From contig NC_043014.1 of assembly GCF_006345805.1 (NCBI RefSeq), positions 20,832,001 through 20,896,000 of the forward strand: a stretch of 64,000 bases of DNA, written 5' to 3'. The position numbers and the translations under genes were made by a program. Shown here one piece after another: positions 9,508 through 59,780 of the stretch. Below the pieces are notes generated by a model. The model saw only the letters and a program-made list of their open reading frames with translations, ran no database searches and had not been told where the DNA came from. The stretch is from Octopus sinensis (taxonomy: Eukaryota). Within the stretch, counting starts at the first letter, position 1, and each line of letters begins with the position of its first letter.

Positions 9508-9866
9508 TCTTTTACTCTTTTACTTGTTTCAGTCATTTGATTGCGGCCATGCTGGAGCACCGCCTTTAATCGAGCAACTCGACCCCGGGACTTATTCTTT
9601 GTAAGCCCAGTACTTATTCTATCGGTCTCTTTTGCCGAACCGCTAATTGACGGGGACGTAAACACACCAGCATCGGTTGTCAAGCGATGTTGGAGGGACA
9701 AACACAGACATACAAACATACACGCACACACATATATATATATACGACGGGCTTCTTTCAGTTTCCGTCTACCAAATCCACTCACAAGGCTTTGGTCGGC
9801 CCGAGGCTATAGTAGAAGACACTTGCCCAAGGTACCACGCAGTGGGACTGAACCCGGAACCATGGA
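9507..9866 (-). mobile_element. tRNA-derived SINE, family A (most abundant here)
   Basis: Minus strand ATGGTTCCGGGTTCAGTCCCACTGCGTGG...CTTGGGCAAGTGTCTTC..., a central TA/TG tract, and the tail GTCAAATGACTGAAACAAGTAAAAGAGTAAAAGAG. Confidence 0.9.
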
Positions 9867-15061: not shown

Positions 15062-15522
15062 AGGCGCATGCGTAGGTGTGTGATAAGAAATTTGCTTCCC
15101 GACCACATGGTTCCGGGTTCAGTCCCACTGCGTAGCATCTCGAGCAAGTATTTTCTACAATAGCCTCGGACCAACCAAAGCCTTGTGAGTGGATTTGCTA
15201 GACGAAAACTGAAAGAAGCCCATCGTGTGTGTGTGTGTGTGTGTGCGTGTGTGTGTGTATGCGCGTGTGTGTGTGTCTGTGTGTGCGTGTGTGTGTATGT
15301 GTGTGTGTTTGTGTCTGTGTTTGTCCCACCACCATCGCATGACACCCGGTACTGGTGTGTTTACGTCACCACAACTTAGCGGCTCAGCAAAAAGAGATTG
15401 GTAGAATCAGTAGTAAAATAAAGAGATAAAAAAGAAAAATTCCAGGGTCGATTTATACGACTAAAACCCTTTGAGACGGTGCTCCAGCATGGCTGCAATC
15501 AAACGACTGAAGCACATAAAAG
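15062..15522 (+). mobile_element. SINE family A
   Basis: Head GGTTCCGGGTTCAGTCCCACTGCG, a central (TG)n, and the tail GCATGGCTGCAATCAAACGACTGAA. Confidence 0.85.
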
Positions 15523-15779
15523 ATAAAGAAGATAAACGACATACAGCATAGATTTCGGTGAAGATTCTATCAAATTCAAGTACAAAAGGGATTCGTCGGC
15601 TTAAGGGCTGAGGCTATATAGTATAAGTCACTTGCCTGAGGTACCGCACAGTGAGACTGAACCCGAAAGATCGTGGTTGCAAAATGAGCTTCTTTATGGC
15701 AGCCTTGCCTACCGCTTCATCCACCCCTAGAAAGAGAGGCATTGATAAAGAAACCCTGGGAGACCAAGTAGTTTGGTAC

Positions 15780-16235: not shown

Positions 16236-16445
16236 TGTGTATTTGTCTGTCTATATTTGTCCCCCCAACATCGCTTGACAACCGATACTGGTGTGTTTAC
16301 GTCGCCGTATGTTAGCGGTTCGGCAAAATAGACTGATAGAATAAGTACTGGGCTTACAAAGAAAAAGTCCTGAAGTCGATTTGCTCGGCTAAAGGCGGTG
16401 CCCCAGCACGGCCGCAGTCAAATGACTGAAACAAGTAAAAGAATG
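16021..16445 (+). mobile_element. SINE family A
   Basis: CAGGAGTGGCTGTGTGGTAAGTAGCTTGC (A box)...GGTTCAATCC (B box)...GTCAAATGACTGAAACAAGTAAAAG. Confidence 0.9.
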
Positions 16446-18715: not shown

Positions 18716-18767
<52 letters not shown>

Positions 18768-18985
18768 TGTGTGTGTGTTTGTCCCGAACCACTGTTTGAC
18801 AACCGGTGCTGGTGTGTTTATGTCCCGTAATTTAGCGATTCGGCCAAAGATACCTATAGAATAAGTACCAGGTTTTACAAAAAAAAGTCATTAGTACTGG
18901 TGTCGATTCGTCCGATTAAAATTCCTCAAGGTGGTGCCCCAGTGTCGCCGGAATCTAATGACTGAAACAAATAAAAGTTAAAGGA
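18558..18985 (+). mobile_element. SINE family A
   Basis: Head GGTTTTGGGTTCAGTCCCACTGCGTGGCACC, central (TG)n, and tail AATGACTGAAACAAATAAAAG. Confidence 0.85.
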
Positions 18986-19316
18986 CAAAATATACGAATT
19001 ATTTTAATTTTTCATGCTATTCCTAATAATATCTAATTATAAAAAATATAATAATGCTTTTTTTTTTAGCATTGAATGGCTAAGCGGGTTCACCGAAGTA
19101 AAATAGGAATCCATAGGGGTCGATAGACAAAAATAGTTGAGTAACACTGCTCGACGTGGTCATCCGACTTGCCAGAAATCGCTATCAAATTCTCTTTCAC
19201 CAACTTAGAGACGGACACTTTAAATGATATGCTCTTGGTTTACCTGCACGTAGGAAACTGGTGTGATGCTCGTAGCTGGAATACCCACTGGTCGTTGGTC
19301 TGTTCGATCGGCACTG

Positions 19317-19424
<108 letters not shown>

Positions 19425-19425
19425 G

Positions 19426-19685
19426 GAAAGTTATGGAGCATGAGGAAAGTAATGGTGATACCGGTGGTAATTGGAGCATTAGGAGCAGTTTTCAAGGGCT
19501 TTGAAAAACGTATTTATTGGAGCTGCTGTCTGCAGGCTCGATGTGATCCAGAAGACAGCATTGTTGGGTACAGAACGCATTCTAAGGAGAGTATTTTCTC
19601 TTTGAGTCACAGGAGAGGGCACTACTTGAAACCTTTGGTGATTTGTTATTGCCTGCTTTCAAGTAATGAGTAACCGTGAGTCTTT
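19426..19685 (+). mobile_element. R4/Dong-clade LINE 3' end, flanked by (TAA)n on both sides
   Basis: LWSMRKVMVIPVVIGALGAV...IQKTALLGTERILRRV, then a short 3' UTR. (TAA)n at about 19350-19425 and 19690-19753. Confidence 0.85.
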
Positions 19686-19689
19686 AATC

Positions 19690-19753
<64 letters not shown>

Positions 19754-19754
<1 letters not shown>

Positions 19755-20261
19755 TAACTGATTGGAAGTGTTATCATGTACATTGTTTTGTCTTAGTATA
19801 AAAGATGGGCTACAGCAAATATTCTGCTGAATACCACAGATTTGCTTGTCAGTTGATCGACCATAACCAGTTGAGCATGTCCCTTAGTGGCTGACGATAT
19901 GTGCATCTCTGATCACAAGCAGAAGTAGTGGGGGAGCATCATAGCCGTGTGTTGAAAGGAATTCTTGGAGGTTTAGATAATTCACTTTTGGAAACATGGG
20001 TGGTTTGTTCAACATCCTTAAACAATCCTTATTCAGGGACCTTTTGAACGGGATGGGCTACTCGACCAGAAGAAAATTCTAAGTGGACCCCATCTGCAAG
20101 GTCATGTGCTATTTATCTTGATATGAGATCCTCATGTCGCGCACATATGGTTGTGATGCATGTACCTGGTGTACCCTTATCAGATGGGTAGTCATGGGTA
20201 TACTGGGCTTCGTATATTTTACCCCAGTGTCACTTTGATCGCATGCACTACTCTCTCACTC
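19754..20261 (+). mobile_element. ~500-bp non-coding dispersed element embedded in (AAT)n
   Basis: TTAACTGATTGGAAGTGTTATCATGTAC...CTCTCTCACTC, with (AAT)n on both sides. Homologous copies at 21122-21495 and 21789-22162. Confidence 0.75.
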
Positions 20262-20690
<429 letters not shown>

Positions 20691-20861
20691 AGGTATAAAC
20701 TGAACGGGGTACGCTAAGTACCTTTTTGTACATATATGAGATAATCCTTTAATCCTCCAAATGGTAAATCGAATTAACAACTAAAGCGTGTACATAGCAT
20801 ACGGAACTTGCTGGAGTTTTTAAAACAGTGCAGAGCTCTGTTTTATATTGGTTAAATAGAC

Positions 20862-20865
20862 GATG

Positions 20866-20926
<61 letters not shown>

Positions 20927-20928
20927 TG

Positions 20929-20981
<53 letters not shown>

Positions 20982-21081
20982 CATAATAATAACAACAACA
21001 ACAACAACAACGACGACGACGACGACGACGACGACAACAACAACAACAACAACAACAACAGCAACAATAATAATAATAATC

Positions 21082-21123
<42 letters not shown>

Positions 21124-21738
21124 CAGTACCAGGTAGTGGCTCTCGTGGCTTCTGATCTTAACTGATTGGAAGTGTTATCATGTACATTGTTTCGGCTTGG
21201 TATAAAAGATGGGCTACAGCAAATATTCTGCTCAATACCACAGATTTGCTTATCAGTTGTTTGACCGTAACCAGTTGAGCATGTCCCTTAGTGGCTGACG
21301 ATATGTGCATCTCTGATCATGGGCAGAAGTAGTGGGGGTGCATCATAGCCGTGTGTTGAGAGGGATTAATTGGGGTTTGGATAATTCACCTCTGAAAACA
21401 TGAGTGTTTCATTCAACATGCTTTAAAGAACCCTTATTCAGGGACCTTTTGAGCGAGATGGGATAATCGACCTGAAGAAAATTCCAACTGGTCTTAACTG
21501 ATTGGAAGTGTTATCATGTACATATATGAGATCATCATCATCATCATCATCATCATCATAATAATAATAATAATATAATATAATAATAATAATAATAATA
21601 TAATAATAATAATATAATAATAATAATAATATAATATAATAATATAATAATAATAATCATAATAATAACAACAACAACAACAACAACGACGACGACGACG
21701 ACGACGACAACAACAACAACAACAACAACAACAGCAAC

Positions 21739-21790
<52 letters not shown>

Positions 21791-22197
21791 CAGTACCAGG
21801 TAGTGGCTCTCGTGGCTTCTGATCTTAACTGATTGGAAGTGTTATCATGTACATTGTTTCGGCTTGGTATAAAAGATGGGCTACAGCAAATATTCTGCTC
21901 AATACCACAGATTTGCTTATCAGTTGTTTGACCGTAACCAGTTGAGCATGTCCCTTAGTGGCTGACGATATGTGCATCTCTGATCATGGGCAGAAGTAGT
22001 GGGGGTGCATCATAGCCGTGTGTTGAGAGGGATTAATTGGGGTTTGGATAATTCACCTCTGAAAACATGAGTGTTTCATTCAACATGCTTTAAAGAACCC
22101 TTATTCAGGGACCTTTTGAGCGAGATGGGATAATCGACCTGAAGAAAATTCCAACTGGTCTTAACTGATTGGAAGTGTTATCATGTACATATATGAG

Positions 22198-22205
<8 letters not shown>
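20862..22205 (+). repeat. Tandem duplication, period 667 bp
   Basis: ATGCAGTACCAGG at 21121 and 21788, and ATATGAGATC ends at 21531 and 22198. The (AAC)(GAC)(AAC) block is also duplicated. Confidence 0.9.
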
Positions 22206-22241
<36 letters not shown>

Positions 22242-22294
22242 TATCATCATAATAATAATAATAATATAATAATAATAATTAAAAAAATAATAAT

Positions 22295-22337
<43 letters not shown>

Positions 22338-22365
22338 TAATAATATAATAATAATAATAATAATA

Positions 22366-22408
<43 letters not shown>

Positions 22409-22459
22409 TATTATGATATTATTATTATTATAATAATAATAATAATAATAAATAATAAT

Positions 22460-24127
22460 AATAATTTCTCTATTAACCAGAAAGGGTTTACATAAAAAGC
22501 AGAATGGACAGCACAGGACAAGTACAATGAGGAATATGTGAAAAGCGTGTCAATAATGAAAAACAAAAACAATAATGAAATATAACAACAAAACTCGTGA
22601 AAACCCCACGAGTCCACAAACGTCCTGACCACTAGGGTAGGTGCCCTTTCCGCTTTATCTACAGGCACATGTTTAGAGTAGGCCCATTCATTTGGGCTAT
22701 TCTTGCGACATTCACCCACCTTTTAACAAAGTTGCTGGGGAGAAGAACTTCCCTCTCCATCCTCACTTTCCTTTCCAAGTGAAATTTAAAACAGTTGATG
22801 AGGGCTTGGCCAAAGAGAAAAGTATCTGTCTTCAGCCATGTCAGCCCTCTCTTTTGTTGTTGTTGTGTTGGAGATGTCTGCAGCAGCACGGTTTTCTCTT
22901 TTGATTGTCTAGGGCAGAAAGCCTTTAAGTGGTTTGTTTGGCCACAAATGTGACATCTGGACTTTCTGCCCTCTACCGCTACAAATAACTTTCACCCTCT
23001 TGGGAGCTCGATGAGAACAGGGATCTCTTGTGCGGTCGCGAAATCCACACGCACTAAGATATCCATTACAGTCCCGTACCAGTTTTCTGTTTTGTGTCTC
23101 CGTATTTCAAGGATTTTGGCCGCCGCCAGTAATGAGATGTTCACTTCTGATGGCACTTGTGCCACTTTAACTCTGACAACTCTTCGACCGAGGTACGTCA
23201 GAATCATATGTAATTCCTCGGTCTTCATGTTTGTTGTTGCATTTTCTTTGGCCAGGTATTCTGATGAAAATCTCACCTGAACTGTACCGTAGTTTTTGCG
23301 ACGTGCAATATATTCCATACAGGTCTCAGGCATTTTCGACCTGAGCCTGCGCGGATCTTTCTATCTTGCGCGTCTTTAAAGATATATTGTCCTCCTCCGT
23401 GTCTCTTCCTGCACCTCCTCTGGCGTGTTCAGGTGGGCCGTCCTGCCAGCTCTTGTTAGATGCATTTTTGCTCTAGCCAAGGCAGTTTCTGGCAATTTCA
23501 CTTCTTCCAACCTGTGATACATTTCTGCAAATCCATTTTGTGTTTTCTTAGAAGAAGCAGATGACGTTGTTGTTTTAATAATTCTTTTTCCCTCTTTGTT
23601 TGACGTAATAGTGGCGGCGGTGGCGACAACTACAGGTGCTTCACTTGAAGGAATTCCACCTTCCTTCTTTTCACCTTCCTGCTTATTTTTGTTATGTTGC
23701 TTGGTCCTGTGATGGCAATTATGGTAGCGGTGTTAGTGTTCTCCTCCGCTCCCTCCCTCATGCCTCCGTCTGTATTCATGGTGTTGTTGTTGATGGTGCT
23801 GGTGTTGGTGTTGCTTCTACTCTTCCTCTCCCCCTCAACCAAATTGGTAGTGAAGGGAAGGAAATTACGAAAATGCTGCGAGTTCTCCACACCCATAACT
23901 TGTGTGGCCATATTGCAAGTTTTGTTTAAATATGATATTTTGAGTCATTTAAAACGCAAAATTCGCCCTTACGGACGAATTTTTTGTCACCCCCAGCTAG
24001 CCCTGCTTGTGGCGAGCTGGGTTGTAAAAACAACAGTTCAACAAAAATGGGAAAACAAAATGTAAAACAGCAAGTTTATAGAAAAGTTCACAGACCTCTG
24101 AACACGCGACCGACAACTCCAGACACA
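22460..24127 (-). mobile_element. Internally deleted, ORF1-only Tx1/L1 derivative (HAL1-like) in a (TTA)n array
   Basis: 5' UTR; ORF1 with RRM-like segment and zinc knuckle CHICGQTNHLKAFC (22914-22955); in-frame ORF2 tail LKTDTFLFGQALINCFKFHLERKVRMEREVL...RWVNVARIAQMNG; 3' UTR ending TGTAAACCCTTTCTGGTTAATAGAGAAA followed by (TTA)n. Stops at 22992 and two upstream of 23333. Confidence 0.7.
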
Positions 24128-24134
24128 AATAATG

Positions 24135-24182
<48 letters not shown>

Positions 24183-24460
24183 GTTGTATACAGTGCCCAC
24201 GTGCTCTACAACCAAAAGCGCATGAAGAGTACATAGAATTGGTATGCAGTCTGCACATCCAACATCCAAAATACACTTTCACCTTTATGCTTATCCACCT
24301 TGATCAAAATACGACTGAACCTGGACTCTTGGAGAGAAACCATAATTCTATAAGTCATTCGCTACTAATGATTGCGTTATCTGGAACAATTAAAATCTGG
24401 AAGGTTCTCTTGAATTTAGAGAGTGAATGTTTACATAGAGGACGATGAAGAGAACAAGCG
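24183..24460 (+). mobile_element. Possible RLE-LINE C-terminal fragment
   Basis: KAHEEYIELVCSLHIQHPKYTFTF...IALSGTIKIWKVLLNL resembles the K..KY..L...L..L.P.Y.F / SGT.KI.K.FL ending of RLE LINEs. Bracketed by (TAA)n and (TTA)n. Confidence 0.4.
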
Positions 24461-24520
<60 letters not shown>

Positions 24521-24569
24521 TTGTAACCAAGCAGGATGATTGATCAAGCTCCAATCAGGATGAGAAAAC

Positions 24570-24721
24570 ATACATGTATCGATACATACATACACACATG
24601 AATGCTTGCATGCATGCATACAAACATACATATACACACACATGCATGCATCATACATACACATGCACATATACATACGCACACATACATACACAGACAT
24701 ACATGAACATATATATATATA

Positions 24722-24798
<77 letters not shown>

Positions 24799-24914
24799 CA
24801 TACATACCCATACATTCATACAAAAATACATACACACATACACATAATGTACACATGCATACTACATGTAGACAAACAGGCAGGCAGATACGTACACACA
24901 CACACACACACACA

Positions 24915-24949
<35 letters not shown>

Positions 24950-24986
24950 TACATATATCCATCTATCCATCCATACATACATACAT

Positions 24987-25015
<29 letters not shown>
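24570..25015. repeat. Compound (TACA)/(TA)/(CA)/(CAGA) microsatellite
   Basis: Direct inspection. Confidence 0.95.
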
Positions 25016-25019
<4 letters not shown>

Positions 25020-26039
25020 AGAAAAGTCATGTACTGTTGTTAGCAGCCAAACGGATGTGAACATTTTAATCAAAATCAATGGAGCAGTGAATATTCATGG
25101 ACAACTGCTTCGAAAACTTTAAATTGTTTAGTCAGGTTATACATTTACATATGTACCTATAATTATACACTGGTGCTCTTGGTTACGTTGCTAAGTTCTT
25201 AGAAATTGGAAAGCTGGGATTTGTTGAAAATTATATATTAGCGTCAGACGCAGTTACCGAGAGATAATATTTATCCCCACTTAAAAGTAGACATTCTGTT
25301 AGAAAAAACTATATTGTGGTAGACACCACGAGAGAAACTCTCGTATGGGTTTTTGGTACCAGATAAATCCCCGCCATCTTCAGCGCCGAGACACCCAGAT
25401 CACGGGATTTCGACCTTCTTTAGTCTTGTCAATGATGGACACTCGACCCTTAGAGACAGCAGTGATTCATCTTCCCTCCAGCGATATATAGAAAATCATC
25501 GTCAAGACAGGCACTGGTGTCGCGAATAATCAGTGAGCTTGTTAAAATGTATATATGTTAGTGACAGACACAGCATTAATACCGAGAGGTAATATTTATG
25601 CCAACTTAAACAAGGATGTTCCGTGAGAACAAACTATGGTATTTACAGCATTATAGTTTGTTCTAGCAGAACATCCAATTTTAAGTGGTGGGGAAAAATA
25701 TCACCTCTTGTTGAGAATTGTTGAAAAGCTATAATTTTCAGAGAAAAGTAAATGCCATCTAACATATATTCCACAAATTGAGTCAAGTAGAACAGTAAAA
25801 GTATGCAAGACATTTTTGAAATTTAGCCTGTAATGCAGGCTAAATGTTGTTTGGTGTTCGTTAATTCTAATAATGGTGTTGTTTCTTAGTTACGAACAAA
25901 TAGCTTCTTTGAGAAAAATTCAAAGGATTTTAAAAGAGAGTGAGGGAGATACAGGAAAGAGAGAGGGGAGAGAGAGAACATGTGTAAGAGAACTGAGGAT
26001 ATTCTTCATGTTAACAAAAATTTTCTTTGAATCTTTTTA

Positions 26040-26988: not shown

Positions 26989-27078
<90 letters not shown>

Positions 27079-27083
27079 TAATA

Positions 27084-27118
<35 letters not shown>

Positions 27119-27175: not shown

Positions 27176-27439
27176 TATTCTGTTCTGTCTGGGGAGAGTC
27201 ATTTTCTTTTTGTGCCTATAAATGTAACACACTCACCGGTAAAACTTCCACTTCTTTTTTTCTTATTTTTATTTTCCTAAAATTTTCGTTGCGTCTTGCA
27301 ACTATTGAAAAGGTTGCAAGATGCAACGAGAGTTTTAGGAAAATAAAAATAAGAAAAAAAGAAGTGGAAATTTTACCGGTGAGTGTGTTACATTTATAGG
27401 CACAAAAAGAAAATGACTCTCCCCAGACAGAACAGAATA
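27176..27439. repeat. Near-perfect palindrome, 127-bp arms, 10-nt loop
   Basis: 27176-27302 is the reverse complement of 27313-27439 with about 4 mismatches. The loop is TATTGAAAAG. Confidence 0.95.
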
Positions 27440-27463
27440 ATAATAATAATAACAACAACAATG

Positions 27464-27526
<63 letters not shown>

Positions 27527-28016
27527 GAGTACCGATGGTATGAAGATTCAGAAGAGATGGCCTATAGATGACCTATATGAAAACGAAACCTACCATCATT
27601 AAAAAGAAACCATACGTAATCGGCAATGTAAAACAAGAAAACGGAACAACATTTTATGTTAACGTAATTTTTATTAACTTTGGATATGGCGTATTTCTTG
27701 ACTATTATAGTCAGTGCCATGGAGAAGAGAGTCTCTTGAATTATGGAAGCATAATTTCAATGATTATAGTTTGAAACAATGATATTGTTTGCTAGAAGAT
27801 AATATAAAATAAAATAAAGATATTAAAACGATGGCAGACGATACAAGTTAAGCATCCAGTGGTATAAGAAACCAGTATGGTGCTGAACTTCCCGAGTGAA
27901 TATAAATGGAAGGAAAAGTAGATAATGAAAGTCAGACAAGACGTTAGGAAAGATACCTTATCCCCAGCCTCGCATCTTGACACTGTTCCTGTGTTCGTCT
28001 TCTTTCGATGTTGTTA

Positions 28017-28580
28017 TTATTTTTTATCTTCTTCTTCCTCCTCTTCTTGAATGGTCGGTAAACTACTCATGTAAAAATATCTGTTATATAGTCTCATTCC
28101 ATTGTAAAAACCATCTCTGTTTTTGTGTTTTAAACGTCTGGACTTTACATTTTCACAACTGACAATTTTTAAAATCTTCTTCTTCAAGCTGTCATCATAT
28201 TCAACAGGACCACCACCGCTTACAGCAACCCCAACAGTGGCAGCAGCACCAACTTTCACTTGTAATATATTTTCACCAGAACCTTCCATGATGGGCTTCA
28301 TTTGTTTCCTATCCTCTCCATCAGTTGATGTTGATGTAGTCGATGGTGGTGATGTTGATAATGATGACATTTGATCTGTGAAGTAGGGAAAGTTGAGCTG
28401 ATCTTGTTGTTGTTCCTGTTGTTTTAATTGCTGTAGTTGTTGTAAAAGAAGTTCACCGATAGTAATAGGAATGTCACCGGCAGACTGATTCTCTATCGAA
28501 ATTTTGGACTTAACTCCTGGCTCGTTCTGCTCACTGTCTAGTTCTAACGCTAAAGAAAGCAGTTTCAATTTTGAATACAT
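28017..28580 (-). CDS. Candidate intronless orphan protein, 187 aa, with Q-rich segment and C-terminal LxxIxE motif
   Basis: ATG with an in-frame stop 5 codons upstream; non-microsatellite sequence; no TE motif recognised; ends SSLPTIQEEEEEEDKK; AATAAA at 27675-27670, about 340 nt past the stop. Confidence 0.5.
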   Translation of the reverse strand: MYSKLKLLSLALELDSEQNEPGVKSKISIENQSAGDIPITIGELLLQQLQQLKQQEQQQDQLNFPYFTDQMSSLSTSPPSTTSTSTDGEDRKQMKPIMEGSGENILQVKVGAAATVGVAVSGGGPVEYDDSLKKKILKIVSCENVKSRRLKHKNRDGFYNGMRLYNRYFYMSSLPTIQEEEEEEDKK

Positions 28581-29034
28581 CCTTTCGTTTAAATGTTATT
28601 TAGTGTTTCATTTTTCAAATTTCCGAAAGAAACATTTACGGAAAATAAATAATCTAGAAGTAGAAATATTACAACGGTAACAACATCCCGACACCTATAA
28701 TACTAACAAAATGCTGATTAAAAAAATAGTGACAATAAAAACTATATCAGAAATTCTGATAATTCTGAATGGAGATATGACAACGAAATTGTTCAAAATG
28801 TTGAGAGAAGCGTGTGTTTGTCTGTGTGTATGTGTGTATACACGCACACACATACACACGCACACACATACACACGCACACACATACACACACACGCACG
28901 CACGCACACACATGCATGTGTCCATATACGTGCGTGCGTGCGTGTGTGTGTGTGTGTGTGACGTTCTCGGATTTGTGACGTCATATGGAACTACGAAATT
29001 GTCACAATCAAAGAGACATTCTAACTTCATGTTT

Positions 29035-29255
29035 GTCTTTGTGCCTATTTGATCCCCCACCACCGCTTGACAAACAACCGGTTCTGATGTGTTTACATCC
29101 TCGTAGCTTAGCGGTTCAGCAAGAGACACCAATAGAATAAGTACCAGGCTATAAGAAAAACGTACTGAAGTTGATTCATTCGATTAAAACCTCTTCAAGA
29201 CGGTGCCTCAGCATGGCTGCAGTCTAATGACTGAAACAAGTAAAAGATAAAGGAA
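29035..29255 (+). mobile_element. SINE family A, 3' half
   Basis: CCGCTTGACAA...GGTGCCTCAGCATGGCTGCAGTCTAATGACTGAAACAAGTAAAAG. Confidence 0.8.
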
Positions 29256-30674
29256 AATGACTAGCGATCTATCCAGGGGAAGTAGAGAGGAATTTATCTC
29301 ACATTTGTGTAACACTGCTGAAACTTGGAGGTTAAGAATTTTAATGGGGGTTCTTTCTGTCTTTACAAACCCCAACAAAAATAATGTAAATAATGAAAAA
29401 TTCTAATCACGACATATTTATCCCATACTACTCATCTTTATGCCCAGATACCAAAATCAAAATCATGTAAAACCCATTCAAACGTTTTTGCTCCTGAAAA
29501 ATGGAAGACATGGAGCACATGAAACTCTAACATGTGGGAGTTAAGGCCCCTATTAGGGAGCTGTTAAAGTCAACCAAAGAAGTTGAATCGTTGGGAATCG
29601 TTTTTAACTTGTGTCATATATCTATTGTTCAAATTTCTTTGAAGTCGGAAATATATGAATGTTCAGTGGGTTTGTAAAAGAGAGCAAAGCTAGAGGAAAC
29701 CAAAAGACGAATGATTACAATAAGCAGTCAGTTACCCTACCCTAGCCGTTACCACTCCCCAATGTAGGATTCCTCGCCATACAGGTTACCGGCACAGCCG
29801 TAAAATGCAATACAGATCTATACTGGAAGGCGTGACCCAACTCAAATAAACATTAACAACTGTGTGATGTGAGGGCTAAGGGGAAATGAAAGTGTCATCT
29901 CTGGAGTTTGTCAATGATCACTATGCCGATAAGAAGCTGAACAGAATAAATTTGCAATCTATAAATCTCTTTGAATGACCAATCATTTATCTGGAAAGGC
30001 CTTGAAATCGATGTTACCATCTGGGGACTATCTCTGACGCAGTGATAATAAAAAACCTCAAAGGAGGTCTGCAACCAAATAATTTTACTCAAACTAACAC
30101 TTTGCAATTGAATCAGTACAGGCAAAGATGTCTGTCCTTTACTCGACAATTTATGCACCGCATTGCAGAAATCACGATCTAAATATATCTCAAAGCAAAC
30201 ATTGAATTACAAATAACGCTTGTTTTGTATGCTCGGGTGACTCTACAGCATCCACGACTACAACTGTATTCGTCTTGGCTTAGGAAAAATGACTAAATTG
30301 TGGAAATTAAGCCCCCATTAAGGGGTCTTACTAACTACCTAAGAAGTTGAAATTTTAGGAATATTACTTCATTTGTGTCTAATATCTATGGTTAAAATTT
30401 CATCAACAGCAACAATATATTAATTTTCATGGGGGTTATGGCCTCATTTATGGCCCTCACTTTCAAACATATACTGCATTACATCCGACCTTATGCATAG
30501 AATATAATTTCCAAATTTCATAAATATCCATTAAGTACTTTTGACTTTGTTTTGGATCATAAAAAAATGACTAAAATTTGGGAATTAAGACCCCAATTAG
30601 GAGCTCTTAGAATCCTCATGAGAAGCGGAAATTTTGGGAATACTTCTTGATTTTTGTCGATTGCCTATGGTTGA

Positions 30675-43143: not shown

Positions 43144-43540
43144 AGGTGCAGGCATGGCTGTGTGGTAAGAAGTTTACTTCCCAACCACATGGTTCTGGGT
43201 TCAGTCCCACTGCATGGCACCTTGGGCAAGTGTCTTCTACTATAGCCTCAGGCTGACCAAAGCCTTGTGAATGGATTTGGTAGATAAAAACTGAAAGAAA
43301 CCCTTTGTATATATATATGTGTGTGTGTGTGTGTGTATCTTTGTGTATGTGTTTGACACCCACTACCAATTGACAACTGGTAATGGTGTGCTAATGTCCT
43401 CATAACTTAGCAGTTTGGTAAAAGATACTGATAGAATAAGTATCAGGCTTCAAAAATAAGTACTGGGGTCAATTAGTTCAACTAAAATTCCTCAAGGTGG
43501 TGCCCCAGCATGGCCACAGTCTAATGAGTAAAGCAAACGA
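43144..43540 (+). mobile_element. SINE family A (CpG-decayed)
   Basis: Same layout as the 16021 copy, with CG changed to TG/CA (GCCTCAGGCTGACC versus GCCTCGGGCCGACC). Confidence 0.9.
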
Positions 43541-46660: not shown

Positions 46661-48866
46661 TCATCATCATCGTTTAGCGTCCGCTTTCCATGCTAGCATG
46701 GGTTGGACGGTTCAACTTGGGTCTGGGAAGCCAGAAGGCTGCACCAGGCCCAGTTTGATCTGGCAATGTTTCTACGGCTGGATGCCCTTCCTAACGCCAA
46801 CCACTCCATGAGTGTAGTGGGTGCTTTTTACGTGCCACCGGCACAGGTGCCAGACGTGTCTGGCAAACGGCCACGATCGGATGGTGCTTTTTATGTGCCA
46901 CCGGCACGGGGGCCAGGCGAGGCTGGCAACGGCCACGAACGAATGGTGCTTTTTACGTGCCACCGGCACGAGGCCAGTCGGGGCGGCGCTGGCAACGGCC
47001 ACGTTCGGATGGTTCTCTTATGTGCCACTGGCACTGATAACTCAGCTGCAATTTCCATTGATCGATTTCAATTCTGTTTCTCACTTGCCTCAACAGGTCT
47101 TCACAAGTAGAGTTTTGTGTCCCAAAAAGGGAAGGTATGCATAAGTGGGCTGGCTACATCCCATGTAGAAGGCCACGGGTTATGGTCTCACTTGTCCTGC
47201 CGGGTCTTCTCACACACAGCATACTTCCAGAGGTCTCGGTCTCTAATTTGAAGGTCGTGCTTCACCACCTCGTCCCAGGTTTACCTGGGTCTGCCTCTTC
47301 CACAGGTTCCCTCAACCACTAGGGTGTGGCACTTTTTCACGCAACTATCTTCATCCATTCTCGCCACATGTCCATACCAGCGCAATCGTCTCTCTTGCAT
47401 ACCACATCTGATGCTTCTTAGGTCCAGCTTTTCTCTCAAGGTACTTACACTCTGTTGAGTATGAATACTGACATTACACATCCATCGGAGCATACTGGCT
47501 TCATTTCTTGCGAGCTTACGCATATCCTCGGCAGTCACGGCCCATGTTTCACTGCCATGTAGCATGGCTGTTCGTACACATACGTCATACAGTCTGCCTT
47601 TTACTCTGAGCAAGAGGCCTTTTGTCACCAGCAGAGGTAAGAGCTCTCTGAACTTTGCCCAAGCTATTCTTACTCTAGCAGTTACACTTTCAGCACACCC
47701 GCCCCCGCTGCTGACTTGATCACCTAGGTAACGGAAGCTATCAACTATTTCTAGTTTTTCTCCCTGGAAAGTGACAGAAGTTGGTCTCAGAGCATTTTCA
47801 GTGTTTATTGTTCCTGAGCATCTGCCACATACAAAAACCATCTTCCTAGTTAGCCTTCCTTTGACATTGCTGCACCTCTTATGTGTCCATAGCTTACACT
47901 TGGTGCATCTTATAGAGTTTCTACCTACACCTTTTCTACAGATCGAGCAGGGCCATCTACCTGAAGGCGTTTGTGATTTGTCTACCTTCCTACTTATTAG
48001 GACTTTGGTTTTAGCTAGATTGACTCTAAGGCCCTTCAATTCTAATCCTTGCTTCCACACCTGAAACTTCTCCTCCAGTTCTGATAGTGACTCAGCAATT
48101 AGAGCAAGGTCATCAGCATAGAGGAGCTCCCAAGGGCATCCTGTCTTGAATTCCTCCGTTATTACCTGGAGGACTATGATAAATAGGAGGGGGCTGAGGA
48201 CTGAGCCTTGGTGGACCCCTACCTCTACCCGGAATTCTTCACTGTACTCGTTGCCAACCCTCACCTTACTAGCAGCGTCCCTGTACATGGCTCGCACAGC
48301 TCTCACTAACCATTCATCTATCCCTAGTTTCCTCATTGACCACCAGATAAGGAATCGGAGGACCCTGTCGAAGGCTTTCTCCATATCAACAAAAGCCAGG
48401 TACAGGGGCTTATCTTTGGCTAGGTATTTCTCCTGCAGCTGCCTTACCAGGAATATAGCATCAGTGGTACTTTTCCCTGGCACGAACCCAAACTGCATCT
48501 CATCTAAACTAACTCTCTCTCTAATTAGTTGGGCTATGACCCTCTCCGTAACCTTCATCACCTGATCCAACAGCTTGGTACCTCTGTAATTATTTGTATC
48601 TAGGGCGTCACCTTTACCTTTGTAGCAGTTGACTATTATGCTGCTACACCAGTCATTGGGTATGACTGCTTCGTGTATCACCTGATTAACTATACGGGTG
48701 ACTAGGCTATAGCCGACACTACTAGATATTTTGAGCATCTCTGCAGTGATTCCTGATGGGCCTGGGGCTTTCCCTGTCTTCATGCTTCTAATTGCCTTAA
48801 CTACCAAGGAACTGTCAACTCAGATAGCTGGTCCCTCTGTTGGGTCAACATTCGACAGACTCTCTT
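46661..48866 (-). mobile_element. Young 5'-truncated RTE-clade LINE, ~2.2 kb
   Basis: 508-codon reading frame 47281-48807 with RT motifs (KAPGPSGI, QFGFVPGKST, FVDMEKAFD, GVHQGSVLSP, YADD, FRYLG, RLRWYGHV). No ATG start; premature TAA at 47281 before KTWDEVV; (ATG)n tail. Confidence 0.95.
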
Positions 48867-54783: not shown

Positions 54784-55534
54784 TTTTGATACCAATCCAC
54801 CTGATAATCATTCCTGGTTCTGTGCATCTTATTTACATGAAGTGGAGTTGTCTGTATAATTATATAAACATTTGAATGACTGCGTAAGCTAATCTTGCAT
54901 AAAGTGGGGATCCGTGTATAACTGTGTGATTGTACGAGTATATAGTTGATGTTGTCAAGTTCCAGTTGAGCCCTGGTTAAGAAAACCCATTATCCTAAGC
55001 ATTCCGGATGAGTACATGCTGCTTTTTGTATTTAGAAGTACGTTTCTGTTTTGTTTTGTTTCTTGTTTTTTTAAGTGACAGTGTGTGATTCAAATAAATT
55101 TGGTTGTGAATTTTGGGGTCAGGTAATCACATTAAAATCAAAGCTCTCTCATTGTCTTCCATATGCATATGTACAAGGTATATTCGTGTAGTTAAGAAGT
55201 TTGCTTCACCATCATGAAACACCCAGGTTCAGTGCTACTGTATAGCATCTTCAGCAAGTATCTTTTCTCATAGCACCAGGTCACCACAAGCTTTGTGAAT
55301 GAAATAGAGTCAGACAGATACTGTATAGAAGTCTGTCATATTGACTGCACCTGTAATTTTAATGCCTAGCATGGTTGCTTACTCTTGATCATGCTGGTCT
55401 ATGGGATACTCAGCTACTTAACTAAAACAGCGGAGAGGTACCTCAGTTGATTGAATACTCATTGTCAGAGAATTATTTTTATTTTACATTAGTGTGTATG
55501 CGAATATCTATCTAAATATATATATATATTCATA

Positions 55535-55830
55535 TCTTTTTCTCCCTGTTTCAGTCATTAGACCGTGGCCATGCTGGGGCATGCCTTGAAGAATTTTTAA
55601 ACAAGTGAATCAGCTCCAGTACTTATTTTTTTTTAAGCCTGGTACTTATTTTCTCGTTCACTTTTGCCAAACTGCTAAGTTACAGAGATGTAAACACACC
55701 AACACCAGTTGTCAAGCAATGGTGGGAGACAAACATACACACACACATATACGATGGGCTTCTTTCAATTTCCATCTACCAAATCCACTCACAAGGCTTT
55801 GACCGGCCGAGACTGTAGCAGAAGACACTT
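55535..55830 (-). mobile_element. SINE family A, 5'-truncated
   Basis: GTTTCAGTCATTAGACCGTGGCCATGCTGGGG...CTACCAAATCCACTCACAAGGCTTTG. Confidence 0.8.
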
Positions 55831-59383: not shown

Positions 59384-59780
59384 TAGGTGCAGGCATGGCC
59401 ATGTGGTAAGAAGTTTGCTTCCCAAATACCTGATTCCAGGTTCAGTCACACTGCATGGTACCTTGAGCAAGTGACTTCTACTACAGCCTCAGGTTGACCA
59501 AAGCCTTGTGAGTGGATTTAGTAGAAGGAAACTGAAGGAAGCCTGTCATAAATATATGTGTCTGTGTTTGTCCCCCACCGCCACTTGACAACTGATGTTG
59601 GTGTGTTTACATCCCTGTAACTTAACAGTTTTGCCAAAGAGACTAATAGAATAATTACCAGACTTTACAAAAAAATAATTAAATACTAAGGCTGGTTCAT
59701 ATGACTAAACATTCTTCAAGGTAATACCCCACTATGGTCACAGTCTAATGACTGAAACAAATAAAGGATAAAAGTTAAAG
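59384..59780 (+). mobile_element. SINE family A (CpG-decayed)
   Basis: Full layout from head to the AATGACTGAAACAAATAAAGG tail. Confidence 0.9.

What the first reader, a model, noticed from the sequence alone, without database searches (positions are those of the whole stretch)
28017..28580. Orphan 187-aa intronless ORF ending in a near-optimal PP2A-B56 docking motif
Seen: the longest non-TE, non-microsatellite ORF outside the ZNF. It looks largely disordered, with an LQQLQQLKQQEQQQ helix, an S/T-rich stretch, a basic patch (KKKILK...KSRRLKHK), a clean start context and a downstream AATAAA. The C-terminus is SSLPTIQEEEEEED. Known: B56 subunits of PP2A bind LxxIxE motifs, with affinity raised by downstream acidic residues; LPTIxEEEE is close to the strongest binders described. 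Inferred: a lineage-specific small phosphatase adaptor or competitive inhibitor, possibly a member of a cephalopod-restricted gene family.
Basis: partly seen in the sequence, partly recalled or inferred. Interest (0 to 1): 0.7.

Follow-up and report, generated by a model that had tools for sequence, protein, structure and literature searches.

The report
Octopus orphan gene with PP2A-B56 docking tail
This is a real small protein-coding gene, so far found only in octopuses, whose conserved tail closely matches the strongest known docking peptide for the PP2A-B56 phosphatase, although neither its expression nor that binding has been shown.

Summary
The 187-aa ORF is real. It lies on the minus strand at 28017..28580 of an Octopus vulgaris chromosome and ends ...SSLPTIQEEEEEEDKK*.

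**It is a gene under purifying selection, not a chance ORF.**
- Full-length orthologues of 186 aa exist in O. bimaculoides (95% identity) and in a third octopod (86%).
- dN/dS is 0.16 overall and 0.065 in the C-terminal third.
- There are 26 amino-acid changes where neutral simulation gives 43-47.
- The only indels are in frame.

**It is an orphan.** An exhaustive HMMER search of 1.84 billion representatives, a 5.8-billion-protein word search, Pfam and PDB sequences found nothing beyond these octopods. No paralogue was found, so it is a singleton, not a gene family.

**The motif claim holds at sequence level.**
- LPTIxE plus seven acidic residues is invariant except at the free x position (Q/E).
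- It sits in the most constrained block of the protein.
- It matches 10 of 12 residues of the published 80 nM B56-inhibitor peptide.
- A conserved basic patch lies 18 residues upstream, as in RepoMan and KIF4A.

Expression, B56 binding and the role (adaptor, inhibitor or substrate) remain untested. I rate it a plausible new B56 interactor of moderate interest.

The parts
28017..28580 (-). Complete coding sequence: 187 codons plus TAA, in a single coding exon.
   Evidence: ORF listing and sequence. Orthologues of 186 aa in O. bimaculoides and a third octopod. dN/dS 0.16. Differences by codon position 17/12/35, Fisher p = 2e-4. Neutral simulation P < 5e-5.
28044..28061 (-). Core B56 docking motif L174-P-T-I-Q-E179 (LxxIxE).
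   Evidence: It is the only strict LxxIxE in the protein. L, P, T, I and E are invariant in three species, and only the free position 5 varies, Q/E. The same LPTI.E core is in the published 80 nM B56-binding peptide.
28026..28043 (-). Acidic tail E180-E184 plus D185 directly after the motif, followed by K186-K187 (28020..28025) and the stop.
   Evidence: Its length is identical in three species despite synonymous GAA/GAG changes. It overlaps a weak (GAA)n-type repeat, 28027-28048, TRF score 30. Acidic residues C-terminal to LxxIxE raise B56 affinity according to PMC11954910.
28116..28184 (-). Basic region K133-R155 (KKKILKIVSCENVKSRRLKHKNR). It fits a bipartite-NLS-like pattern and is a candidate 'basic patch' for the B56 acidic groove, ending 18 residues before L174. 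A helix is predicted at 130-141.
   Evidence: Regex match KKILKIVSCENVKSRRLK at 134-151. All basic residues except K146 (T in the third octopod) are invariant in three species. AF2 predicts a helix at 130-141 with low confidence. The basic-patch rule comes from PMC7108865.
28062..28115 (-). [quoted passage not shown] It contains two YxxM motifs. Its function is unknown; it may be a second binding module.
   Evidence: 17 of 18 residues are invariant in three species. dN/dS of the C-terminal third is 0.065. YxxM matches at residues 159 and 168.
28401..28580 (-). Conserved N-terminal module (residues 1-60) with two predicted helices, 4-17 and the Q-rich 41-59.
   Evidence: dN/dS 0.10 for residues 1-62. 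AF2 predicts helices 4-17 and 41-59, and the second has the highest pLDDT in the model at about 61-66. The Q-rich part overlaps a weak (CAA)n repeat at 28404-28443.
28209..28394 (-). Relaxed, low-complexity S/T/P/G-rich linker (residues 63-124) with one SP site (S77).
   Evidence: dN/dS 0.34. pLDDT 32-48. A weak hexanucleotide repeat lies at 28324-28359. The in-frame indel of O. bimaculoides falls here.
27650..28016 (-). Putative 3' UTR with a poly(A) signal AATAAA at 27675..27670.
   Evidence: It is the only AATAAA on this strand between 27300 and 28016, and it is conserved in L001. Cross-species identity is 84-87% up to about 27650 and falls to 69% beyond. No transcript data were available.
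28581..28700 (-). Conserved 5' leader or proximal promoter. It holds an in-frame TAA 18 nt upstream of the ATG, three mini-uORFs, and a TATA-like or acceptor-like T-rich tract at about 28695-28725.
   Evidence: 90.8% identity to L001, higher than 4-fold sites at 81.5%. uATGs at 28686, 28635 and 28611. Sequence.

Best explanation
The locus is a real, single-copy, octopod-restricted protein-coding gene of Octopus vulgaris, already annotated as an uncharacterised protein. It encodes a 187-aa, largely disordered protein built from five modules:
- a conserved N-terminal helical part;
- a fast-evolving S/T-rich linker;
- a basic, NLS-like patch;
- an aromatic-rich conserved segment;
- a C-terminal LPTIxE motif followed by seven acidic residues.

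The most likely mechanism is that the exposed C-terminal tail inserts into the conserved LxxIxE pocket of the B56 regulatory subunit of PP2A. This would be phosphorylation-independent and high-affinity, helped by the acidic tail and possibly by the upstream basic patch contacting the B56 acidic groove. The protein would then either tether PP2A-B56 to whatever its N-terminal and aromatic modules bind (adaptor or substrate), or, if abundant, occupy the pocket and compete with other LxxIxE clients (inhibitor).

Shown here: the gene is real, selectively constrained and orphan, and the motif is conserved and of the strongest published sequence class. Inferred: disorder and accessibility, nuclear localisation, B56 binding, and the adaptor-versus-inhibitor role.
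For: **The gene is real.**
- Orthologues at 95% and 86% identity have the same length and the same ends.
- dN/dS is 0.16 overall, 0.10 for the N-terminal third, 0.34 for the middle and 0.065 for the C-terminal third.
- Under neutral simulation, 64 substitutions keep the frame open in only 2-6% of trials and give 43-47 amino-acid changes, against 26 observed; 0 of 20,000 trials reached 26 or fewer.
- Third-position excess is 35 versus 17 and 12, p = 2e-4.
- The ORF has only in-frame indels, while the flanks carry 1-, 2- and 10-nt indels.
- The protein is present in the NCBI and UniRef annotation of GCA_951406725.2.

**It is an orphan.** Only the three octopod proteins appear in an exhaustive HMMER profile search of 1.84 billion representatives and in a word-seeded search of 5.8 billion proteins at E <= 10. 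Pfam gave no hit above cut-off and PDB sequences gave none.

**The motif.**
- SSLPTI[Q/E]EEEEEED is invariant except at the free x position.
- It shares 10 of 12 residues with STLPTIHEEEEE. The literature reports that peptide as a non-phospho-dependent B56 binder with Kd 80 nM, stronger than the 750 nM-110 uM of the other peptides compared with it there, and able to displace B56 clients when merely expressed.
- An almost fully conserved basic patch (one Lys, K146, is Thr in the third octopod) ends 18 residues N-terminal to the motif. RepoMan RKKK563-566 lies before its motif at about residue 590, and KIF4A KKK1208-1210 before residue 1224.
- The tail is predicted unstructured.
- The motif-plus-acidic pattern is unique in the window's six-frame translation.
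Against: - No expression evidence was obtainable. The third-species contigs look genomic, because they are collinear with the window through a (TG)n microsatellite and past the poly(A) signal.
- No binding data exist, and no complex model could be run.
- The whole C-terminal 40 residues are almost invariant, so conservation cannot be assigned to the motif specifically.
- The acidic run coincides with a degenerate (GAA)n tract in a microsatellite-rich genome. It could serve another role or be partly a compositional by-product.
- The AF2 disorder call rests on a 3-sequence alignment (mean pLDDT 44.6) and is weak evidence.
- Three uORFs upstream could mean low translation.
- Only three closely related species are available, so the depth of conservation is shallow (4-fold divergence 18.5%).
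Confidence: 0.45

Rival explanations
1. This is a real octopod orphan protein, but the C-terminal LPTIxE and acidic tail has a function unrelated to PP2A-B56. Possibilities are a CK2-phosphorylated acidic cluster (T176-I-Q-E fits S/T-x-x-E), an electrostatic partner for the protein's own basic patch or for histones and other basic proteins, or part of a larger conserved binding surface with the aromatic segment. On this reading the resemblance to a B56 motif is coincidental.
For: - The entire block 148-187 is invariant, not only the motif residues.
- The acidic run overlaps a (GAA)n-like repeat.
- L..I.E alone occurs 15 times by chance in the window's six-frame translation.
- A CK2-type site lies at T176 and YxxM motifs lie nearby.
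Against: - The match goes well beyond the minimal consensus. LPTI.E plus at least five acidic residues is identical to the strongest published binder.
- The only substitution in the motif is at the position the consensus leaves free.
- The B56 pocket is exceptionally conserved across 150 B56 sequences, so an exposed peptide of this sequence would be expected to bind.
Confidence: 0.33
2. The ORF is only the last coding exon of a larger spliced gene, or a gene with additional upstream coding exons. The 187-aa 'small protein' would then be an incomplete model.
For: - A conserved T-rich tract followed by AG dinucleotides lies at about 28695-28725 on the coding strand, in both the window and L001.
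- Octopus genes often have very large introns (general knowledge).
- No transcript data were available.
Against: - An in-frame TAA 18 nt upstream of the ATG is conserved in L001, so any acceptor in the 5' flank would give only a non-coding leader.
- Protein conservation starts exactly at Met1, with 15 of the first 15 residues identical.
- The independent gene model in O. bimaculoides has the same start and stop.
- No other gene is called within 10 kb on either side.
Confidence: 0.07
3. This is not a functional protein-coding gene. It would be a chance ORF, a non-coding transcript, or a decaying pseudogene or retrocopy that gene predictors picked up.
For: - No homologue outside octopods and no domain.
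- A third of the ORF is low-complexity, repeat-like sequence.
- uORFs lie upstream.
- There is no expression evidence.
- The flanks are nearly as conserved as the ORF at DNA level: 84-91% against 88.5%.
Against: - dN/dS is 0.16.
- There is a strong third-position excess.
- Amino-acid change is far below neutral expectation (P < 5e-5).
- The open frame and exact length are retained in three species, with in-frame indels only.
- No parent gene for a retrocopy is detectable.
Confidence: 0.05
4. It is a secreted peptide or neuropeptide precursor, processed at its basic sites (KKK, KSRR, KHK).
For: It is a small protein with several di- or tri-basic sites and a moderately hydrophobic N-terminus, KLKLLSLALEL.
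Against: - The hydrophobic core of the N-terminus is only about 6 residues. It is interrupted by E13 and followed by an acidic stretch, and is predicted as an amphipathic helix.
- There is only one Cys, no Gly-dibasic amidation site and no repeated peptide units (composition).
- The basic region fits an NLS-like bipartite pattern instead.
Confidence: 0.03

Closest known systems
Engineered PP2A-B56 inhibitor peptides: the 'high-affinity LxxIxE peptide' and 4x LxxIxE inhibitor of Kruse et al. 2020 (PMC7327492), and LIE1 of the directSLiMs system (PMC11954910)
   Same: The local sequence is the same: S-x-L-P-T-I-x-E-E-E-E-E, 10 of 12 residues identical. It needs no phosphorylation and has an acidic run directly after the core. 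LIE1 binds B56 at 80 nM, and when merely expressed it already competes off some B56 interactors.
   Different: Those are artificial constructs of one or four peptide copies. This is a natural 187-aa protein with one copy at its extreme C-terminus plus other conserved modules. The octopus tail has Q/E instead of H at position 5, seven acidic residues, and a terminal KK. Binding has not been measured.
Natural LxxIxE-plus-basic-patch B56 interactors: RepoMan/CDCA2, KIF4A, AIM1, NHS (PMC7108865); BubR1
   Same: A disordered region carries an LxxIxE motif with a conserved basic cluster some 15-25 residues N-terminal to it. Here the cluster is KSRRLKHKNR, ending 18 residues before L174. These proteins act as substrates or adaptors that bring PP2A-B56 to a site.
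   Different: There is no sequence homology. Those are large multidomain proteins conserved across animals, and most have micromolar, often phospho-enhanced motifs. This is a small orphan with a constitutively optimal motif.
Small endogenous PP2A regulators: BOD1 (B56 inhibitor, <200 aa, PMC12794331) and ARPP19/ENSA (B55 inhibitors)
   Same: Small size, and the proposed role as a stoichiometric modulator of one PP2A holoenzyme family.
   Different: There is no Pfam or HMMER similarity to them. They become inhibitors upon phosphorylation (general knowledge) and are widely conserved, whereas this protein would act through a constitutive docking motif and is octopod-restricted.
Taxonomically restricted (orphan) genes of octopus genomes
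   Same: No homologue outside the lineage, a short single coding exon, low-complexity composition, and annotation as an 'uncharacterized protein'.
   Different: Unlike many orphan models, it shows clear purifying selection and carries a recognisable, high-quality functional motif.

Membership tests
PP2A-B56 LxxIxE-motif interactors (SLiM class) | Core motif L/[MFIC]-x-x-I/[VL]-x-E | tested here: met
   L174-P-T-I-Q-E179 is the only strict match in the protein.
PP2A-B56 LxxIxE-motif interactors (SLiM class) | Acidic or phosphorylated residues immediately C-terminal that raise affinity | tested here: met
   E180-E184 plus D185, the same length in three species. The rule comes from PMC11954910.
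PP2A-B56 LxxIxE-motif interactors (SLiM class) | Motif lies in an intrinsically disordered, accessible region | tested here: inconclusive
   AF2 gives no structure and pLDDT of about 40 for residues 142-187. However, the alignment has only 3 sequences, so low confidence is expected anyway.
PP2A-B56 LxxIxE-motif interactors (SLiM class) | Motif conserved among orthologues | tested here: met
   It is invariant in O. vulgaris, O. bimaculoides and a third octopod except at the free position 5, Q/E. C-terminal dN/dS is 0.065. The phylogenetic depth is shallow.
PP2A-B56 LxxIxE-motif interactors (SLiM class) | Direct binding to the B56 pocket, lost on L/I/E-to-A mutation | not testable with these tools
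   This needs ITC, pull-down or a complex model.
PP2A-B56 interactors with auxiliary basic patch (PMC7108865) | Conserved basic cluster within roughly 15-25 residues N-terminal to the motif | tested here: met
   The basic cluster of residues 146-155 ends 18 residues before L174. R148, R149, K151, H152, K153 and R155 are invariant in three species; K146 is Thr in the third octopod. Spacing in published cases is about 13-23 residues. Its functional contribution is untested.
Known small PP2A inhibitors (BOD1, ARPP19/ENSA and others) | Sequence homology to the family domain | tested here: not met
   Pfam at E <= 10 gives only DUF4657 at 13.9 bits, below the 27-bit cut-off. The exhaustive HMMER search found no relatives.
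Pfam DUF4657 (PF15552) | Score at or above the gathering threshold | tested here: not met
   13.9 bits against a cut-off of 27, E = 0.042. The match is confined to the Q-rich and S/T-rich low-complexity region, residues 47-111.
   No second copy in the window. Only one protein per species, and only octopods, in searches of 5.8 billion and 1.84 billion proteins. Database coverage of other cephalopod genomes is unknown, so absence there is provisional.
Taxonomically restricted protein-coding gene (orphan) | Purifying selection on the ORF together with no detectable homologue outside the clade | tested here: met
   dN/dS 0.16 and neutral simulation P < 5e-5. No outside hits.

The most novel reading that the evidence does not exclude
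Octopods evolved, possibly de novo from trinucleotide-repeat-rich DNA, a natural stoichiometric blocker or re-targeter of PP2A-B56. It would be a small nuclear protein whose constitutive, phosphorylation-independent C-terminal LPTIxEEEEEE tail occupies the B56 LxxIxE pocket with nanomolar affinity. That would make it the natural counterpart of the engineered B56 inhibitors, giving a lineage-specific layer of control over a universally conserved phosphatase.
Probability: 0.15. Interest if true: 0.65.

Novelty: new member of a known kind. Interest (0 to 1): 0.35.

Why it matters
If the tail binds B56 as its sequence predicts, this would be a rare natural protein carrying a constitutively optimal, phosphorylation-independent B56 docking site. 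Most validated natural motifs bind with micromolar affinity, and per the reviews read here binding is enhanced by ligand phosphorylation.

It would also be an example of a young, lineage-restricted gene plugging into an ancient signalling hub through a short linear motif. That bears on two questions: how orphan genes acquire function, and how PP2A-B56 client competition is tuned. It would also give cephalopod biology a tractable candidate regulator.

If the tail does not bind B56, the result is still a well-supported octopod orphan gene under purifying selection, which is ordinary for this genome.

Tried and rejected
1. **Distant homology.**
   - Pfam at E <= 10 gave only a sub-threshold low-complexity hit, DUF4657.
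   - The exhaustive HMMER profile search returned only the O. bimaculoides orthologue.
   - A second word-seeded search at E <= 10 over 8000 candidates returned only the three octopod proteins.
   - PDB sequence search at E <= 10 returned nothing.
2. **C-terminal-only profile.** A 60-column profile search returned nothing, not even the query's own proteins. This is uninformative and probably reflects the word index failing on short queries. A first attempt failed on a parameter limit.
3. **Nature of the third-species runs.** I looked in the literature for what SRR11869391 and SRR11869385 are. The only hit was a false prefix match to an unrelated plant accession. Whether L001 and L002 are DNA or RNA is therefore unresolved. 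Their collinearity through microsatellites and the very high contig index suggest genomic reads.
4. **O. bimaculoides DNA.** The locus was not on record, so dN/dS used only the window and L001.
5. **Fold search.** I did not run it, because the model's mean pLDDT of 44.6 would give meaningless matches.
6. **Second B56-like motif.** MKPIME at 94-99 was rejected because position 1 is Thr in the other two species.
7. **Other docking motifs.** PP1 RVxF, calcineurin PxIxIT and LxVP, KEN and D-box are all absent.
8. **RNA genes.** No tRNA or Rfam family anywhere in the window.
9. **Paralogues.** No copy of the ORF elsewhere in the window.
Full report
**1. The observation**

The window carries an ATG-to-TAA ORF of 187 codons on the minus strand at 28017..28580.
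- a Q-rich LQQLQQLKQQEQQQ stretch;
- an S/T-rich stretch;
- a basic patch, KKKILK...KSRRLKHK;
- a C-terminus ...YFYMSSLPTIQEEEEEEDKK*.

- Two lysines follow the acidic run.
- The only AATAAA on the coding strand downstream is at 27675..27670, 342 nt past the stop.
- The start has A at -3 and an in-frame TAA 18 nt upstream. However, three short out-of-frame uORFs (uATGs at 28686, 28635, 28611) lie within 106 nt.

An ATG ORF this long is not expected by chance. Mononucleotide shuffles of the window give 0.01 ORFs of at least 187 aa each. The pattern L..I.E followed by three acidic residues occurs exactly once in the 128,000 residues of the six-frame translation, and that occurrence is here.

**2. 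Where the window comes from**

The exact protein is encoded on record OX597833.1 (73.6 Mb) of assembly GCA_951406725.2. That is the chromosome-level Octopus vulgaris reference genome. The protein is already present in NCBI and UniRef, so the gene model exists but is uncharacterised. No other gene is called within 10 kb on either side.

**3. Is it a real gene?**

Two full-length orthologues were found:
- O. bimaculoides A0A0L8GJK7 ('Uncharacterized protein', 186 aa, 95% identity in the alignment).
- A 186-aa protein from short Logan contigs of runs SRR11869391 and SRR11869385 (L001, L002; 86% identity). These come from an unidentified, more distant octopod.

Start, stop and length are preserved. 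The only indels are one codon each, in the Q-run and the S/T-run.

Evidence from comparing the window with L001:

| Measure | Result |
|---|---|
| dN / dS | 0.066 / 0.40, ratio 0.16 |
| dN/dS for codons 1-62 | 0.10 |
| dN/dS for codons 63-124 | 0.34 |
| dN/dS for codons 125-187 | 0.065 |
| Differences by codon position (1st/2nd/3rd) | 17 / 12 / 35, Fisher p = 2e-4 |
| Neutral simulation: frame stays open after 64 substitutions | 2-6% of trials |
| Neutral simulation: amino-acid changes | 43-47 expected, 26 observed; 0 of 20,000 trials at 26 or fewer |
| Indels in flanks | 1, 2 and 10 nt |
| Indels in ORF | a single 3-nt indel |

I conclude that this is a protein-coding gene under purifying selection. 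The N- and C-terminal thirds are strongly constrained and the middle third is relaxed.

*Flanks.*
- The 120 nt upstream of the ATG are 90.8% identical between species. That exceeds 4-fold degenerate sites (81.5%) and the other flanks (84-87%).
- Identity falls to 69% just beyond the AATAAA.
- This pattern is what a transcribed unit of roughly 27650..28700 would give, but it is indirect evidence.
- A conserved T-rich tract with several AG dinucleotides at about 28695-28725 could be a 5'-UTR splice acceptor or a TATA-like element.
- 'Intronless' is therefore established only for the coding region.
- L001 and L002 are collinear with the genome through a (TG)n microsatellite and beyond the poly(A) signal. 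They probably come from genomic reads and say nothing about expression.

**4. Relatives**

| Search | Result |
|---|---|
| Pfam at E <= 10 | Only DUF4657 at 13.9 bits (cut-off 27), on the low-complexity stretch |
| HMMER profile of the three orthologues vs 1.84 billion cluster representatives | Only the O. bimaculoides protein |
| Word-seeded search of 5.8 billion proteins at E <= 10 | Only the three octopod proteins among 8000 scored candidates |
| PDB sequences | Nothing |
| tBLASTn of the protein against the window | No second copy |

On present data the gene is therefore a single-copy, octopod-restricted orphan. It is not a member of a detectable gene family. Absence from squids, cuttlefish and nautilus is provisional, because I could not search their genomes directly.

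**5. Anatomy of the protein**

| Residues | Feature | Evidence |
|---|---|---|
| 1-60 | Conserved; two predicted helices (4-17 and the Q-rich 41-59) | Helix 41-59 is the only region with pLDDT above 60 |
| 63-124 | S/T/P/G-rich low-complexity linker with relaxed constraint and one SP site | |
| 130-141 | Predicted helix | |
| 133-155 | KKK...KSRRLKHKNR; fits a bipartite-NLS-like pattern | |
| 156-173 | Nearly invariant aromatic-rich segment DGFYNGMRLYNRYFYMSS; two YxxM motifs | |
| 174-185 | LPTIQE plus EEEEED, followed by KK | |

The AlphaFold2 model is low-confidence overall (mean pLDDT 44.6 on a 3-sequence alignment). It is compatible with a mostly disordered protein but does not prove it.

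Three of the low-complexity stretches coincide with weak, degenerate repeats on the coding strand: (CAA)n, (ATCAAC)n and (GAA)n. This fits a young gene assembled in a microsatellite-rich genome. It also means the acidic run could have arisen by repeat slippage. Its length, however, is fixed across the three species despite synonymous GAA/GAG changes.

**6. The motif**

- L174, P175, T176, I177, E179 and the following seven acidic residues are identical in all three species.
- The single difference is Q versus E at position 5, the position the LxxIxE consensus leaves free.
- In the 17 terminal codons there are three synonymous changes and this one replacement.

What the literature retrieved here says:
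- The peptide ...STLPTIHEEEE... is the 'high-affinity LxxIxE peptide', used alone or as a tetramer to block the B56 pocket (PMC7327492).
- As LIE1 (STLPTIHEEEEE) it is non-phospho-dependent and binds with Kd 80 nM. The other published peptides it was compared with there range from 750 nM to 110 uM.
- It is predicted to lose affinity progressively as the C-terminal acidic residues are removed (PMC11954910).

The octopus tail SSLPTI[Q/E]EEEEEED shares 10 of 12 residues with LIE1. The differences are at the residue before L and at the free position.

PMC7108865 adds two points:
- A conserved basic cluster N-terminal to the motif strengthens binding through an acidic groove on B56. Examples are KIF4A KKK1208-1210 before residue 1224, and RepoMan RKKK563-566 before about residue 590.
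- The concave surface of B56 is exceptionally conserved across 150 B56 sequences.

In the octopus protein the basic cluster at residues 146-155 (invariant apart from K146, which is Thr in the third octopod) ends 18 residues before L174.

**7. Mechanism**

The most likely reading has confidence about 0.45 as a whole. Within it, my own estimates are about 0.9 that the gene is real and about 0.7 that the isolated tail binds B56 in vitro.

The exposed C-terminal tail would dock constitutively into the LxxIxE pocket of PP2A-B56. The acidic run and perhaps the basic patch would add affinity. Three outcomes are possible:
- The N-terminal helical module and the aromatic segment bind something else, so the protein tethers PP2A-B56 to it (adaptor).
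- The protein itself is dephosphorylated in its S/T-rich linker (substrate).
- At high abundance it competes with other LxxIxE clients (inhibitor).

The NLS-like basic region suggests the nucleus as the site of action.

Shown: gene reality, selective constraint, orphan status, motif presence and motif conservation. Taken from the literature: the affinity class of this sequence. Inferred: accessibility, localisation, binding, and which of the three roles applies.

**8. Rivals**

| Rival | Confidence | Main point |
|---|---|---|
| (a) Real orphan protein whose conserved acidic C-terminus does something else, for example a CK2-phosphorylated acidic cluster (T176-I-Q-E fits) or an electrostatic module | 0.33 | The whole 40-residue block is conserved, so the motif cannot be singled out by conservation.
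| (b) Terminal exon of a larger gene | 0.07 | Disfavoured by the conserved in-frame stop upstream and by conservation starting exactly at Met1. |
| (c) Not a functional gene | 0.05 | Contradicted by all selection tests. |
| (d) Secreted peptide precursor | 0.03 | No convincing signal peptide and no amidation sites. |

**9. Comparison with what is known**

- Functionally it resembles the engineered B56 inhibitors, and natural LxxIxE-plus-basic-patch interactors such as RepoMan, KIF4A, AIM1 and NHS.
- It is not homologous to them, nor to the small PP2A regulators BOD1 and ARPP19/ENSA.
- Membership in the SLiM class is met for the sequence-level criteria: core, acidic flank, basic patch and conservation.
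- The accessibility criterion is inconclusive, and the defining criterion, mutation-sensitive binding, is untested.

**10. Novelty and verdict**

The gene model is already in public databases as an uncharacterised protein. What is new is the evidence for purifying selection, the orphan status and the functional hypothesis. I rate it a candidate new member of a known kind (LxxIxE-bearing B56 interactors) carried by an octopod orphan gene, with interest 0.35.

The most novel reading not excluded is a natural, lineage-specific, constitutive blocker or re-targeter of PP2A-B56 that arose de novo. I give it probability about 0.15 and interest 0.65 if true.

**11. Dead ends**

- The C-terminal-only profile search returned nothing, not even the query's own proteins.
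- The literature search for the SRA runs gave a false match.
- The O. bimaculoides DNA was not on record.
- Fold search was skipped because of the low-confidence model.
- No tRNA or Rfam family was found in the window.

Noticed in passing
window 27176-27302 and 27313-27439: A near-perfect hairpin with 127-nt arms, 97% complementary, and a 10-nt loop. It is flanked by long microsatellites, (ATA)40 at 27000-27118 and (AAT)30 at 27436-27526, and lies just downstream of the gene's putative 3' end. It could be a foldback or MITE-like element or a palindromic duplication.
   Followed up: partly
window ~29030-29258, also e.g. 18761-18988, 55533-55747, 16254-16442, 9508-9719, 43332-43536, 15300-15528, 59567-59772: A dispersed SINE-like repeat of about 210-230 bp with at least 12 copies at 71-79% identity in the window. 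One copy sits about 450 bp upstream of the ORF's ATG, beyond a (TG)n/(ACAC)n microsatellite at 28812-28960. ARAGORN found no tRNA-like head.
   Followed up: partly
window 47281-48807 (-): A 508-aa ORF with a reverse-transcriptase domain (RVT_1, E = 2.8e-29) and a weak, sub-threshold PHD-finger match. It is probably a remnant or partial copy of a retrotransposon.
   Followed up: partly
Pfam reports 11 matched zinc-finger stretches, which from the translation fall into N- and C-terminal groups separated by a non-finger linker.
   Followed up: partly
window 28611, 28635, 28686 (-), 5' leader of the gene: Three mini-uORFs of 3-6 codons lie upstream of the main ATG. The two at 28686 and 28611 are visibly present in the third octopod's contig L001. 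They imply either a very short 5' UTR or uORF-regulated translation.
   Followed up: partly
window 28284-28301 (-), residues 94-99: A second, degenerate B56-like motif, MKPIME, is present only in O. vulgaris. Position 1 is Thr in the other two octopods, so it is probably not functional, or else newly arisen.
   Followed up: yes
window 19263-25122: A cluster of long pseudo-ORFs made entirely of trinucleotide and dinucleotide microsatellites (poly-N, poly-T, poly-S, poly-L, and CV/YI repeats). It shows how readily long open frames arise from repeats in this genome.
   Followed up: no
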